Shown here: piece after piece, positions 17,151-20,889 of the stretch | How the letters are laid out: every line of letters begins with the position of its first letter | How positions within the stretch are numbered: position 1 is the first letter of the stretch | Source of the DNA: Vitrella brassicaformis CCMP3155 | Taxonomy: Eukaryota > Protista > Chromerida | Direction: 5' to 3' | Length of the DNA stretch: 64,000 bases | Assembly (NCBI GenBank): GCA_001179505.1 | Contig: CDMY01000307.1 | Location: 1-64,000, forward strand | Translations under genes and position numbers: made by a program | The notes under the pieces: generated by a model | Told to the model about the DNA's origin: nothing | Databases searched by the model: none | The model's input: only the letters and a program-made list of their open reading frames with translations

Positions 17151-17481
17151 TTCTGCGTGCGTCTGTGAGTGTGTGTGTGTGCAGCGAATGTGATGCGATC
17201 GCTGCGGGCGTTCATGAGCGAGTACCGACCTGGTGAGCAAACATAAAGACAGCCAGTCGTCTTACTTTCTTTGTGTGTGTCTGTGTGCGGAAACAAACAG
17301 GTGTTGGAGACCACGTACGCCACCAAACACACACACATACACACACACACATTGCATGCGTGTCTCCATCTGACTGTGTCTCTGTCCGTCTGTGTGTGTG
17401 CGTTAGAAACCGGTGGCTTTGCACGCGCAGCGATGCACAGAAGACGTAAGTACGAGGACACATTCTATGGCATGGATAACA

Positions 17482-17515
<34 letters not shown>

Positions 17516-17640
17516 CGTCACATTTCCAAATGCCTGCAGGTGCCCCCGACCGCCAGGCCGTGTCATTCGACCGCTAGCCACCTGTCTGTCTGTCTACACC
17601 ACTAGACACCAAGAAGAGGAAGATGCGTCAATGCGTCAGT
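11430..17640 (+). CDS. Large hypothetical protein: disordered N-half with TQT motifs, coiled-coil C-half
   Basis: Many short GT-AG-bounded exons, e.g. VQALQARVQAAEMQ, LVDRLQKEVALR, LRNELSIVQSSLLDAQHK, LEQEKQSLSTQLRNKCTQMARMK (heptad-like). Both ends approximate. Confidence 0.55.
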
Positions 17641-17705
17641 GAGTCCATCCACGACATGAAGGTCCATGCAATGAGTCCACACATCTCTTTGTCCTATACC
17701 TCTCT

Positions 17706-17969
17706 CTACCATAAGACCAGCACACACGCCGCCACAGCAGCGGCGACCGACAAACTGAGCAGCAAGTGCATGCAGGCGCTCACCAGACCCCTCAGCCCAT
17801 TGCTGCCACGTGCATTGGCGTCTCTTGCGTCCATCAGCGAGGCCGCGTACTGCCCCACAGCACCCACAACCGACAGCAGCAGCACAGACAGCACCGCACC
17901 TCCGCGAAGATGCGCTGATCTCTCTGCGCGAGACGGCTCTGGTGTTGTTGCTGCTGGAGGCCTGCGACA

Positions 17970-18001
<32 letters not shown>

Positions 18002-20218
18002 AAGAGAGAGACATCCATCCACCAATCCACACACACACGCACACACGCCCGTCCATCAGACTCACCCATTGGGAGCAGCCACAAGCATAAAATCCCGTAT
18101 ATCAAGGTCGTCAGGCGACTCCAGACCCTCCAGCACCATTCGGTGTGCGCCGTCCTGGGTGCTGATGACGACACTGCCTGCTTGGATGTTGAGCTGGCTG
18201 AGCGACGAGATGTGGAAGGCCCGCATGTCCAGCTGATCCTCGCCGGGGGTGAAGTCGCTTATGGTGGATGTGCCGGCTTGGGTGGAGAGGACGAAGAGAT
18301 CGCTGCCCGCTCCCCCTGGTCGGGAGACACGCACACACAATATGTGCACCTGCATGTGTCTCTTCGTCTCTCTCTCTGTCTCTCTCTCTCTTTGTGTGTT
18401 TGTATACCGGTGAGCGTGTCATTGCCCCCTCCCCCATCTACACACACACACAAACAGAGAGAGAGAAACCGGAAGAGACACATGTCGACACACACACATA
18501 TGCTGTCTCTCTCAGATCACCAAGAATGTCGGTCCCGTCCCCTCCGTCCAGCACATTCGCCGCCGTGCTCCCCAAAATCTCGTCAGCCCTCCCTGTCCCC
18601 CTCACATTCTGCACTGCCGAAACAGCCGACAGCTTTATCAACTGCCCCTGCCCTCCACTGCCGCCACTGCCATTGTCTTCATCCTCCGTGTCACACACGA
18701 GCATGGATACCCCTGTCTCTGTGTCGGTTTCATTTCTGCATGTGGGTGGGATGTGCTCGGACTTTGTGCGCAAAGCCGCGAATGCGGCTTGTATGTCGTC
18801 CCATGGTGCGCGGGGGGGCGGGGGTGTGGGCGGGGTGTCGTCCTTGTCCGATGGTGGGGGGGATGTGCTGATTGTTGGAGGAGAGGTGTCGGTTTCAGAG
18901 TCAGGGAGGGGGGATGGGCTGCATGTCATGACACACACACATGCACGCCTGCAAGTATGGAAGAGACTCTCTGTGTATGTGCGAATGTGTGCTTACGTCA
19001 GAGAAGGAGACGGAGAGGGAGACACAGAGACACTGACGACATACAAAGAAGGAGACATACAGACACACACACACACGCGCATACGTACCTCTCGGTCTCA
19101 GTTGGCTCCTCTGTGCTGCTGGCTGCCTCGGTCTCTGATGAAGGTGGGATCGTGTCTCCTGTTGGAGGCGTCTTCCTGCCCATCGCACACGCACGCACCA
19201 GATGCAAGCAGGCACGTGTGGACGTACGTGGTGCTTGTGGTGGTGGTGGTGCTGGTTGCAGCTGAGAGAGACACACGGCCAGACCAGACATGAGACCGAA
19301 GGCGAGCTTTCCATTCTCCTCACTTGTTGGCGGCTGTTGGTTGGAGGGGTTGAATGACACCTGCACACACGTACACACTGACCTTGCGCCGCGTCGCGTC
19401 ATTCACATGGCCTATGACCATGCGCACGTACAGTGATAGTGCTCATCCTCTGCCAGTTCGACTTCGTCTGTGCTATCACGGCCTGCATACACACACACAC
19501 ACACACAGACGTCCACACACAGATTTCGCCGTGCGTATACACATGTCATGTCACGTGCCTCGAAAGTGACGCTGCCGGCAGTCTCCTCCACATTATACCA
19601 CTTGATGCCCTCCGGCATGTCCTTGTCCACGCTATCTGTCCAACGGGGAAGGCACTCAGAGGGGGAGAGAGAGAGAGTGTCGTGCCGGCATGAGTACCTC
19701 TGTGTGTCAAGAAAGGCCCCGATCCAGGGCCGCAGTTCATTTCCTGCAGAACACTGTTGCCAGGCCTTATCCACCCGCCCCTGCTTGCCTATCAACACAC
19801 ACGCATACCCACACTGTGTCTGCGTGTGCAACAGACGAATGCACGGCTGACCTTGAGGCTCATGCCCTGGAATTGATAGCCACTGAGCGTTACACTAGCC
19901 GTCATCTCATCGTCCTTCGTCACCGACCTGCACAGGCAGCGCCATACATACGGATGTCACTGACTCAATGCGGACGCGCCGAATTCTGCCGCGGCATTTC
20001 ATACCAGGAGTAACCTCTATTCGCGTTTGAACCGTGTCCAGGCGTCACTACGCCGCACTGCACGCGGCGTGGACATGCGCACGCAAAGCGCTGCTTGCTC
20101 TTACCTGTTCCTCCTACTCAGTGCTTACCGGTGCGCCAGAAGCCAATCCCTCACTCATGCGGCCGCCGAAGAGCACGCAGATGACCACAAGGAGCAGCAC
20201 CAAGCTGTCCACGCGCAT
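17706..20218 (-). CDS. Secreted/surface protein with RTX-type Ca-binding nonapeptide repeats, serralysin-like tail and hydrophobic C-terminus
   Basis: Signal peptide MRVDSLVLLLVVICVLFGG and a Pro/Ser/Thr-rich linker. Spliced repeats [45 protein letters not shown], then STISDFTPGEDQLDMRAF. Ends in hydrophobic LLLSLSVAAAVAACVLVLW*. Confidence 0.85.
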
Positions 20219-20889
20219 TTTTTTTCTGGGGGCCGGTGGGGGTGGTCGAGAAAACGACAAAACGACAAAAGCCAGTCTCATGTGTGGGATGTGTGCGGGA
20301 GAACCTTTGCGTCGTGCCCTCTTTCCCGCACGACTCGGCGGTATTCTGCCATGCACACGCCGGTTGCTGCTGCAGTGGATCTGAGCTCATGTGTACTTCA
20401 TTTCAGGGTCGTCAGTGTCTCCTCATCGTGATGTCAACGACACAGTTAACGGTACAAAAAGAGGACAAACACTTGTTCACGCGCTACTGCATGGGCATCC
20501 CCATCCCGCATCCGTGGCAAGACACTGATAAGCGAATGCACATATACATATAGGGAGGAGAAATGCCGGCCGACCCGCCACCCAGCCGCCCTGCGTCGAG
20601 TGATACATACATGTATTTTGCATGTACGCTGCGGCAAAACATACAAATTCCTGGTGCGCTACACATCTATAGAATGATCCCAAATAGAGCCAAGGAAATA
20701 GAGAGCTCAAGCACATCATCGCAACAGCGCAACACATAGAAAAAGAGACACCTTTTCGGACGCCTCCATCCTTCTACTCTTCCCACGTGCACACATGCCC
20801 AGGGCCATCTGTCTGGTGCTTGCTTTGGGCACCAGACACACAGGTAGGCAAGCGCTATCCACCCAACCACCGACCAGTGTATACGCTCA

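What the first reader, a model, noticed from the sequence alone, without database searches (positions are those of the whole stretch)
17706..20218. Bacterial-type RTX Ca-binding module in a spliced, signal-peptide, C-terminally anchored eukaryotic protein
Seen: five tandem nonapeptides (GGxGxDxLx-like), then TISDFTPGEDQLDMRAF, an N-terminal signal peptide and a hydrophobic tail. Established: RTX repeats with a 'TITDF..G.D.IDL' tail mark Gram-negative type I secretion substrates such as serralysins and adhesins. Inference: a horizontally acquired beta-roll re-routed to the ER pathway as a GPI/TM surface protein, perhaps a Ca-dependent adhesin or cyst-wall component.
Basis: partly seen in the sequence, partly recalled or inferred. 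Interest (0 to 1): 0.75.

Follow-up and report, generated by a model that had tools for sequence, protein, structure and literature searches.

The report
RTX beta-roll in algal membrane protein
A spliced, expressed gene of the coral-associated alga Vitrella brassicaformis encodes a membrane-anchored secretory-pathway protein with a genuine bacterial-type calcium-binding RTX beta-roll, and it belongs to a family of at least 14 such genes rather than being a lone recent import.

Summary
On the minus strand, 20218..17706, lies a 14-exon gene of 521 aa. Spliced RNA contigs from 4 runs in 3 studies support it, and it is identical to the public record CEM01638.1 / A0A0G4ET73 of Vitrella brassicaformis CCMP3155.

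Five nonapeptides stand in exact 9-residue register across two exon junctions, one of them a 30-nt mini-exon.
- The spliced product passes Pfam HemolysinCabind (34-40 bits, cut-off 23).
- It matches the CyaA RTX domain, serralysin C-domains and AlgE R-modules by sequence.
- With a 122-sequence alignment it folds as a beta-roll plus cap (pLDDT 89.9). Structural neighbours are serralysin C-domains.

The rest of the protein is a signal peptide, a Reeler-like N-domain (a lead only), a Ser/Thr/Pro-rich stalk and two C-terminal hydrophobic helices. A hairpin or type I anchor is more likely than GPI.

New here: the RTX+cap module recurs in at least 14 Vitrella genes on 14 scaffolds. In the 10 open frames or gene models read, it lies just before the membrane anchor, under varied ectodomains. 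Intron positions are shared among three paralogs. The 10 Vitrella modules sampled form one group against 85 non-Vitrella, bacterial-type modules. Every named non-Vitrella relative is bacterial.

A bacterial origin of the domain is likely, but it is old, with later expansion. Distribution in other eukaryotes could not be tested, and function is inferred. UniProt already auto-names the domain, and I found no paper on it. The scan noted an RTX module on another piece of this genome (s1-201997).

The parts
17706..20218 (-). Whole coding region: 14 exons, 521 codons plus TAG. Equals public protein CEM01638.1 / UniRef100_A0A0G4ET73 (P0151).
   Evidence: Junctions from RNA contigs. Per-exon phases leave every exon open. 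P0151 is identical to the per-exon translations.
20129..20218 (-). Exon 1: start codon and signal-peptide-like segment (aa 1-30). RNA contigs start at about 20227.
   Evidence: KD19 maximum 2.22 at aa 1-27. AF2 helix at aa 3-25.
19324..20057 (-). Exons 2-7: 20057..20005, 19927..19852, 19788..19698, 19635..19559 (GC donor), 19482..19432, 19360..19324. They encode the N-terminal beta-rich domain (aa ~28-165), which is Reeler-like in the Atlas comparison.
   Evidence: Atlas features 0.89 and structure TM 0.70-0.76 to Reeler clusters. A paralogous domain lies on scaffold C371. No Pfam hit.
18800..19360 (-). Exons 7-11, first part (19261..19228, 19175..19089, 19032..18997, start of 18918..18521): Ser/Thr/Pro-rich stalk, aa ~156-250.
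   Evidence: Composition is S 18%, T 24%, P 25%. Mucin-like O-glycosylated proteins are reported for chromerids (PMC4501334 Appendix 5).
18521..18918 (-). Exon 11. Its end carries the pre-RTX lead-in ([16 protein letters not shown]...) and nonapeptides 1-3.
   Evidence: The lead-in aligns with the block starts of the CyaA RTX domain.
18408..18437 (-). Exon 12: 30-nt mini-exon that encodes nonapeptide 4 (GGGGNDTLT) plus parts of two split codons.
   Evidence: A 29-letter insert between 18316 and 18521 in an RNA contig (table 5c).. The same mini-exon is present in paralog C699.
18290..18599 (-). RTX block, aa 318-362: five nonapeptides spread over exons 11-13, with two introns inside this span.
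   Evidence: PF00353 above cut-off. Predicted strands every 9 residues.
18066..18315 (-). Exon 13: nonapeptide 5 and the cap (TISDFTPGEDQLDMRAF ... DFMLVAAPN), aa 354-437.
   Evidence: Peptidase_M10_C scores 18.4-21.1 bits against a cut-off of 20.7. Serralysin alignments reach E~2e-12. Fold matches.
17706..17961 (-). Exon 14: Pro/Thr linker, hydrophobic helix 1 (aa ~457-479, 17903..17835), 16-residue polar loop, hydrophobic helix 2 (aa 495-521, 17789..17709), TAG at 17708..17706.
   Evidence: Splice 18066|17961 seen in four runs. KD19 maxima 1.91 and 2.56. AF2 helices at 448-487 and 492-520.
17540..17705 (-). 3' untranslated region. It is covered by the same contigs that run into the 3' end of a convergent plus-strand gene (intron 17446..17539).
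   Evidence: tables 5 and 8.

Best explanation
This is a real nuclear gene of Vitrella brassicaformis (CEM01638.1) that encodes a secretory-pathway membrane protein. Its order is: cleavable signal peptide, Reeler-like beta-sandwich ectodomain, Ser/Thr/Pro-rich (probably O-glycosylated) stalk, a complete bacterial-type RTX unit, a short linker, and a hydrophobic anchor. The RTX unit comprises a lead-in motif, five Ca-binding nonapeptides that form a parallel beta-roll, and a serralysin/AlgE-R-like cap. In bacteria such a unit stays unfolded in the Ca-poor cytoplasm and folds outside the cell after type I secretion. Here type I secretion is replaced by the ER route, and the C-terminal secretion signal by a membrane anchor. 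The roll would load Ca2+ in the ER lumen or in seawater and form a rigid pedestal next to the membrane, which holds the stalk and the recognition domain outwards. The gene is one of at least 14 Vitrella genes with this RTX+cap module. In the 10 open frames or gene models I read, the module lies just before the membrane anchor, under different ectodomains: FG-GAP/Kelch-like propeller, a domain UniProt names bacterial Ig-like, a Cys-rich domain, a helical region in a protein UniProt names EF-hand domain-containing, and the Reeler-like domain here. The module most likely entered the lineage once from bacteria, gained introns, and was then duplicated and shuffled. Shown: gene structure, expression, RTX homology, predicted fold, family size, shared introns. 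Inferred: Ca-dependent folding, surface location, adhesion or recognition role, single bacterial origin.
For: - Gene model and expression: GT..AG junctions in spliced contigs of 4 runs from 3 studies. All exons are open at their phases, totalling 521 codons. The model is identical to public P0151, and P0057 is a transcript-derived ORF.
- Genome identity: 72,700,666 bp in 1064 scaffolds matches the published Vitrella assembly.
- RTX by sequence: PF00353 scores 34.3-39.8 bits against a 23-bit cut-off. PDB sequence hits are CyaA RTX at 1.7e-26, serralysins at ~2e-12 and AlgE R-modules at 4e-10 across roll and cap.
- RTX by fold: the AF2 model of residues 290-440 has pLDDT 89.9 and pTM 0.85, with strands every 9 residues. 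Foldseek finds serralysin-family C-domains at TMq 0.57-0.66 and probability 1.0. Atlas neighbours have TM 0.71-0.81 and rmsd 2.0-2.7 A, and nine of the ten listed clusters are 100% Bacteria, the tenth 96%.
- Family: 28 PF00353 hits on about 20 scaffolds and 17 cap-profile hits on 14 scaffolds. Paralog open frames and gene models show RTX+cap, then a short linker, then a TM helix.
- Shared introns: the phase-1 intron after DTL(T/M) is present in the C307, C699 and C1064 genes, and the 30-nt mini-exon in C307 and C699.
- Grouping: 10 Vitrella modules lie on one side of a branch (SH-aLRT 94) against 85 non-Vitrella modules.
- Composition: GC does not differ from the neighbouring sequence.
- Ca logic of RTX folding: PMC3034196.
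Against: - No experiment shows Ca binding, surface location or adhesion.
- No SignalP, GPI or topology predictor was available, so the signal peptide and anchor rest on hydropathy and on paralogs.
- The Reeler assignment has no HMM support. It rests on one Atlas comparison of a mediocre model (whole-protein pTM 0.39).
- The tree has only 86 columns. Its non-Vitrella rows were fished with a Vitrella-built profile, and the key branch is not starred.
- Other eukaryotes, Chromera included, could not be searched specifically. Only the best 150 of 2146 profile hits were visible.
- Peptidase_M10_C is borderline: 18.4-21.1 bits against 20.7.
Confidence: 0.65

Rival explanations
1. Recent single-gene horizontal transfer: one bacterial RTX gene landed here and was fitted with a signal peptide and an anchor.
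For: All named non-Vitrella relatives are bacterial, as are nearly all members of the nearest Atlas clusters. The lead-in motif and the cap are both conserved with bacterial RTX blocks.
Against: There are 13 introns, two of them inside the repeat block. GC equals that of the neighbours. At least 14 paralogous modules lie on 14 scaffolds. Intron positions are shared among three paralogs. Identity to the best bacterial modules is only 24-38%.
Confidence: 0.05
2. The RTX+cap module is an old eukaryotic or alveolate extracellular domain inherited vertically, or it came with the plastid from a cyanobacterial ancestor. On this view the bacterial look reflects only database bias.
For: The family is large, rich in introns and compositionally native. 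Cyanobacterial clusters are among the nearest Atlas neighbours. Other eukaryotes could not be searched.
Against: Among the best 150 cluster representatives out of 1.84 billion proteins, the only eukaryotic records identified are Vitrella's own. Nine of the ten nearest Atlas clusters are 100% Bacteria and the tenth 96%. The chromerid genome paper and its supplements list no such domain among shared alveolate extracellular proteins.
Confidence: 0.2
3. GPI-anchored protein: the extreme C-terminal hydrophobic run is a GPI attachment signal that is cleaved at a small residue in ...ARGSNG..., and the protein sits on the outer leaflet.
For: A 27-residue hydrophobic C-terminus follows small residues S-N-G. 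The closest paralog, P0046, ends in a typical short GPI-like tail.
Against: A 21-23-residue, strongly hydrophobic helix lies 16 residues upstream (KD 1.91). It should stop transfer and leave the candidate attachment site in the cytosol. The other paralogs are single-pass TM proteins with cytoplasmic tails. The genome paper saw no amplified GPI-linked families in chromerids.
Confidence: 0.2
4. Artefact: bacterial contamination or a chimeric assembly, or a Gly/Asp-rich low-complexity stretch that only mimics RTX.
For: The Vitrella assembly needed removal of 620 bacterial scaffolds. Single exons score below the Pfam cut-off.
Against: Spliced transcripts join the RTX exons to the signal-peptide and anchor exons. 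DNA runs from several studies hold 80-95% of the stretch. The HMM, the PDB sequence matches and a confident beta-roll model all agree. No sigma-70-like promoter was found.
Confidence: 0.01

Closest known systems
Serralysin-family C-terminal domain (Serratia, Pseudomonas and Erwinia alkaline proteases; PF08548 + PF00353)
   Same: Same parallel beta-roll of GGxGxDxUx turns, closed by a non-repeat cap with the ...DF..G.D.(I/L)D(L/M) motif. Sequence E~2e-12 over query residues 7-91. Foldseek TMq 0.57-0.66.
   Different: There is no M10 protease domain and no type I secretion. The module is internal, followed by a linker and membrane helices. An ER signal peptide is present and the gene has introns.
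R-modules of Azotobacter vinelandii mannuronan C5-epimerases AlgE4/AlgE6
   Same: A self-contained module of about 150 aa, with 4-6 nonapeptides plus a beta-roll extension. The alignment spans roll and cap (query 16-126 against 17-132, E 4e-10).
   Different: No epimerase A-module. Structural superposition on the NMR models is poor (rmsd above 10 A). The context is a eukaryotic membrane protein.
RTX blocks of Bordetella CyaA and other RTX proteins secreted by type I systems (Linhartova et al. 2010, PMC3034196)
   Same: Nonapeptide repeats plus the block lead-in motif (hydrophobic-x-x-hydrophobic-(E/Q)N-hydrophobic-x-G(T/S)...D.I.G). Best sequence hit, E 1.7e-26.
   Different: Only five repeats. 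No pore-forming, acylated or enzymatic toxin part and no C-terminal secretion signal. Nothing suggests toxicity.
Bacterial multi-module RTX proteins from metagenomes (for example MCY4488575.1, Deltaproteobacteria MAG; P0001-P0010)
   Same: Best profile matches to the cap module, and the same RTX+cap unit.
   Different: They carry 5-13 tandem units, have no N-terminal signal peptide and end at the last cap, which is the type I substrate layout. Vitrella proteins carry one unit followed by a TM helix.
Vitrella paralogs CEM30632.1 (P0046), CEM40077.1 (P0032), CEL94344.1 (P0290), CEM18028.1 (P0289)
   Same: Same RTX+cap unit next to the anchor.
   Different: Different ectodomains and different anchors: a GPI-like tail in P0046, and a single TM with a conserved RKRSxSDTRDSR cytoplasmic motif in P0290, P0014 and the related open frames on C499, C349, C1045 and C217.

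Membership tests
RTX nonapeptide repeat / HemolysinCabind (PF00353) | Profile match above Pfam's gathering score | tested here: met
   36.0 bits on P0057, 34.3 on P0151 and 39.8 on residues 255-440, against a cut-off of 23. Single exons score only 15-17 bits.
RTX nonapeptide repeat / HemolysinCabind (PF00353) | Tandem 9-residue periodicity with the GGxGxDxUx pattern | tested here: met
   Five units at aa 318, 327, 336, 345 and 354. Units 3-5 are canonical and units 1-2 degenerate.
RTX nonapeptide repeat / HemolysinCabind (PF00353) | Parallel beta-roll fold | tested here: met
   Prediction only. pLDDT 89.9, strands every 9 residues. Neighbours are serralysin and RTX structures.
RTX nonapeptide repeat / HemolysinCabind (PF00353) | Ca2+ binding and Ca2+-dependent folding | not testable with these tools
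   Needs the purified module measured with and without Ca2+.
RTX proteins in the strict sense (type I secretion substrates of Gram-negative bacteria) | Uncleaved C-terminal secretion signal, no N-terminal signal peptide, export by an ABC/MFP/OMP system | tested here: not met
   N-terminal hydrophobic signal-like segment, and the module is followed by a linker and two hydrophobic helices. It is a eukaryotic spliced gene. It works like an RTX module but is not an RTX exoprotein.
Serralysin C-terminal domain (PF08548) | Profile match above the gathering score | tested here: inconclusive
   18.4 bits (whole protein), 20.2 (P0057) and 21.1 (residues 255-440), against a cut-off of 20.7. Only profile positions 86-136 of 193 are matched.
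Serralysin (M10B metalloprotease) | N-terminal zinc protease domain (Peptidase_M10) | tested here: not met
   No Peptidase_M10 hit at E<=1.
GPI-anchored surface protein | C-terminal hydrophobic signal after a small-residue attachment site and a polar spacer, with the site in the ER lumen | tested here: inconclusive
   The tail fits in outline, but an upstream TM-like helix should place the site in the cytosol. No GPI predictor was available.
Reeler domain (PF02014) | Profile match or a clear fold match | tested here: inconclusive
   No Pfam hit at E<=1 and no PDB sequence hit. The Atlas gives features 0.89 and structure TM 0.70-0.76 over about 130 residues. This is a lead only.
Vitrella RTX+cap membrane-protein family (defined here) | One RTX+cap unit within about 20-70 residues of a C-terminal membrane anchor, in a spliced nuclear gene | tested here: met

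The most novel reading that the evidence does not exclude
Vitrella may hold the first recognised eukaryotic family of RTX membrane proteins. On this reading, a bacterial type I secretion folding module was captured once, detached from type I secretion, and reused as a Ca2+-switched membrane-proximal unit under many ectodomains. Surface adhesion or recognition would then respond to external Ca2+, for example during attachment to coral or to other cells, or at life-stage transitions. The family would be specific to this lineage.
Probability: 0.25. Interest if true: 0.65.

Novelty: new variant of a known kind. Interest (0 to 1): 0.5.

Why it matters
RTX beta-rolls are textbook markers of bacterial type I secretion, because their Ca-gated folding is thought to drive export. 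A eukaryotic family that keeps the whole unit (lead-in, roll and cap) but routes it through the ER and ties it to the membrane shows that the module works without that secretion system. It also gives a natural test of what the roll does by itself: act as a rigid pedestal, a Ca switch or an oligomerisation surface. For chromerid and apicomplexan biology it adds a lineage-specific, expanded surface-protein family that the genome paper's survey of extracellular proteins did not mention. For studies of gene transfer it is a clear case of a bacterial domain that gained introns (one exon equals one repeat) and was shuffled with eukaryote-type domains. The finding is modest because databases already auto-label the domain, and bacterial domains in protist surface proteins are a known theme.

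Tried and rejected
- Pfam on single exons: only sub-threshold hits. This reflects the split repeats and is not evidence against RTX.
- Full-length AF2 without an alignment: pLDDT 42, unusable except for the terminal helices.
- The search for homologous proteins, residues 255-440: swamped by long bacterial multi-repeat proteins, so it says nothing about eukaryotes.
- The search for homologous proteins, residues 362-521: blank. The blank is unreliable, because paralog P0046 scores 77 bits by BLASTP yet was not returned.
- The search for homologous proteins, residues 28-165: blank at E<=10.
- tblastn of single exons against the C699 paralog's upstream region: noise only, so the two genes have different N-domains.
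- PDB sequence search with the N-domain: only Ig-like noise.
- Literature: no paper in the library links RTX or hemolysin-type repeats with Vitrella, Chromera, algae or dinoflagellates as eukaryotic genes.
- Bacterial promoter and terminator scan: nothing above shuffles.
- Contamination, chance low complexity and recent single-gene transfer were considered and rejected (see rivals).
- A donor lineage was not resolved, because the tree has too few columns.
Full report
**What is there.** The region lies in a GC-even (0.56-0.57) stretch with (CA)n and (GA)n runs. I laid contigs of four public runs from three studies on window 17300-20700. They gave ten listed joints whose skipped parts end CT..AC on the plus strand, which is GT..AG on the minus strand, plus further piece boundaries. 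From these I set 14 minus-strand exons: 20218..20129, 20057..20005, 19927..19852, 19788..19698, 19635..19559, 19482..19432, 19360..19324, 19261..19228, 19175..19089, 19032..18997, 18918..18521, 18437..18408, 18315..18066 and 17961..17706. Translated exon by exon at the running phase, every exon is open and the sum is 521 codons plus TAG. All introns are GT..AG except 19558..19483, which is GC..AG.

**Public records.** A profile search returned P0057, a 239-aa transcript-derived ORF. Its cluster also holds P0151, which is 521 aa and corresponds to CEM01638.1 / UniRef100_A0A0G4ET73. Both are letter-for-letter the per-exon translations, so I used those records for whole-protein work.

**Organism.** The window's assembly has 72,700,666 bases in 1064 contigs. 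These are exactly the figures published for Vitrella brassicaformis CCMP3155 (PMC4501334). The cluster record names the same organism.

**Check of the observation.** After splicing, residues 318-362 read [36 protein letters not shown] and GGAGSDLFV.
- These are five nonapeptides in exact register across the exon 11/12 and 12/13 junctions.
- Exon 12 is a 30-nt mini-exon that encodes precisely one repeat. An RNA contig shows it as a 29-letter insert (table 5c).
- TISDFTPGEDQLDMRAF follows directly.
- The final exon is joined in all four runs.

Single exons score below Pfam's cut-off, but the spliced records pass:
- HemolysinCabind scores 36.0 bits on P0057, 34.3 on P0151 and 39.8 on residues 255-440, against a cut-off of 23.
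- Peptidase_M10_C is borderline at 18.4-21.1 bits against 20.7.

**Homology and fold.** Against PDB sequences, residues 300-440 hit three groups:
- the CyaA RTX domain at E 1.7e-26;
- serralysins at about 2e-12, query 7-91 against residues 321-410;
- AlgE R-modules at 4e-10, across both roll and cap.

The stretch before the repeats ([20 protein letters not shown]) aligns with the lead-in of CyaA repeat blocks. The whole unit is therefore conserved, not only the Gly/Asp repeats.

I built a 122-row alignment of Vitrella and bacterial-type modules (A2). With it, AF2 gave pLDDT 89.9 and pTM 0.85 for residues 290-440, with short strands every nine residues.
- Foldseek's best PDB matches are serralysin-family C-domains (TMq 0.57-0.66, probability 1.0), followed by AlgE R-modules, RTX lipases and CyaA block V.
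- The nearest ESM Atlas clusters have TM 0.71-0.81 at rmsd 2.0-2.7 A. Nine of the ten listed are 100% Bacteria and the tenth 96%.

**The rest of the protein.**
- *Signal peptide.* Residues 1-27 are a hydrophobic signal-like segment (KD19 2.22) that ends ...ASGAP.
- *N-domain.* Residues ~28-165 have no Pfam or PDB sequence match and no word-search relatives. A collinear paralog with 38-43% identity lies behind its own signal peptide on scaffold C371. The Atlas places the domain among Reeler-domain clusters (features 0.89, structure TM 0.70-0.76). I treat this as a lead.
- *Stalk.* Residues ~156-250 are 67% Ser, Thr and Pro. This fits the mucin-like O-glycosylated proteins reported for chromerids.
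- *Anchor.* After the cap come a short Pro/Thr linker and two hydrophobic helices (aa ~457-479 and 495-521) separated by 16 polar residues.

**A family, not a singleton.**
- PF00353 hits 28 places on about 20 scaffolds of the genome, most above the cut-off. A profile of the cap (A1) hits 17 places on 14 scaffolds.
- The open frames and gene models I read show one plan: ectodomain, often a Ser/Thr/Pro stretch, four or five nonapeptides, cap, short linker, one TM helix, cytoplasmic tail.
- Ectodomains differ. They include FG-GAP/Kelch-like repeats, a domain UniProt names bacterial Ig-like, a Cys-rich domain in P0032, and a helical region in P0046, which UniProt names an EF-hand domain-containing protein.
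It has the same two introns around the same 30-nt mini-exon and ends in a GPI-like tail.
- The phase-1 intron after DTL(T/M) is also present in the C1064 gene. Duplication therefore followed intron gain.

**Origin.** The cap profile finds 2146 cluster representatives (E<=1e-3) among 1.84 billion.
- Among the best 150, proteins with a single unit followed by a TM helix are all Vitrella's own. The exceptions, each with more than one unit, are a Rickettsiales MAG protein and one unnamed ENA protein.
- The rest look like type I substrates. They have no signal peptide, 2-13 tandem units, and most end at or near the last cap. Those with names or long contigs are bacterial.
- In a quick tree of 95 cap modules, the 10 Vitrella rows lie on one side of a branch with SH-aLRT 94. 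This fits one entry followed by expansion.
- The tree has only 86 columns, and its non-Vitrella rows were fished with a Vitrella-built profile. It does not identify a donor.
- I could not search Chromera or other eukaryotes.

**Mechanism.** In bacteria the RTX domain stays unfolded at under 100 nM cytoplasmic Ca2+ and folds at millimolar Ca2+ outside the cell (PMC3034196). In this alga the signal peptide would deliver the chain to the Ca-rich ER lumen and then to seawater, where the roll should be Ca-loaded and rigid. In the family members I read, the unit lies next to the membrane. I therefore read it as a Ca-stabilised pedestal that carries the stalk and the recognition domain. This is inference.

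For the anchor I favour helix 1 as a stop-transfer segment, as in the paralogs, with helix 2 re-inserting to form a hairpin. GPI anchoring is the main alternative.

**Known or new.** UniProt already auto-names the protein 'Peptidase M10 serralysin C-terminal domain-containing protein'. Neither the genome paper and its supplements nor any other paper in the library describes RTX modules in chromerid or other algal nuclear genes. Another first-stage note flags an RTX module in a different intron-split membrane protein of this genome (s1-201997), which agrees with the family picture.

I class this as a new variant of a known kind: an RTX beta-roll unit freed from type I secretion and built into eukaryotic membrane proteins.

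**Rules.** Read laying was given 3401 letters.

Noticed in passing
window 18408-18437 (-); L002 1296-1325 (+): A 30-nt mini-exon encodes exactly one RTX nonapeptide. Both flanking introns are phase 1. The exon is conserved in size and phase in the paralog on scaffold C699.
   Followed up: yes
window 19483-19558 (-): The intron between exons 5 and 6 is GC..AG, the only non-GT donor in the gene. The RNA contig and the public protein both require it.
   Followed up: partly
window 19176-19227 (-): The transcript-derived ORFs P0152 and P0057 come from a contig that retains the exon 8/9 intron and so splits the reading frame. This is an intron-retention isoform or an unspliced precursor.
   Followed up: partly
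window 17407-17700 (+/-): A convergent plus-strand gene (intron 17446..17539, GT..AG) ends about 130-170 nt from this gene's stop codon. Unstranded contigs run through both genes, so the 3' ends abut or overlap.
   Followed up: no
window 20380-20700: A transcript just upstream is covered by contigs with word depths of 166-1639 in three of the four runs (58 in the fourth), far above this gene's. The gene was not identified.
   Followed up: no
G000:C371:23473-24047 (-) = L026 2977-3551: A second gene carries a paralog of the N-terminal (Reeler-like) domain directly behind its own signal peptide. No RTX hit was found on that scaffold.
   Followed up: partly
L004, L005, L006, L007, L010, L016 (scaffolds C499 twice, C349, C218, C1045, C217): In one subfamily, six intronless RTX+cap+TM open frames share a conserved ECGWF.Y..PEC motif before the TM helix and an RKRSxSDTRDSR motif in the cytoplasmic tail. 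The tail motif could be a sorting or phosphorylation signal.
   Followed up: no
L011, L013, L018, L020 (scaffolds C395, C916, C212, C256): A third group of RTX genes has the repeats chopped into many very small exons and a different tail (GDDLIIDLDGDFGDTMMGGPGADxFILR...). These genes were not analysed.
   Followed up: no
window 17969-18040, 18330-18400, 18440-18470, 19060-19080, 19485-19510: The introns of this gene are largely (CA)n/(TG)n and (GA)n/(TC)n microsatellites, as another first-stage note says of this window (s1-205648).
   Followed up: no
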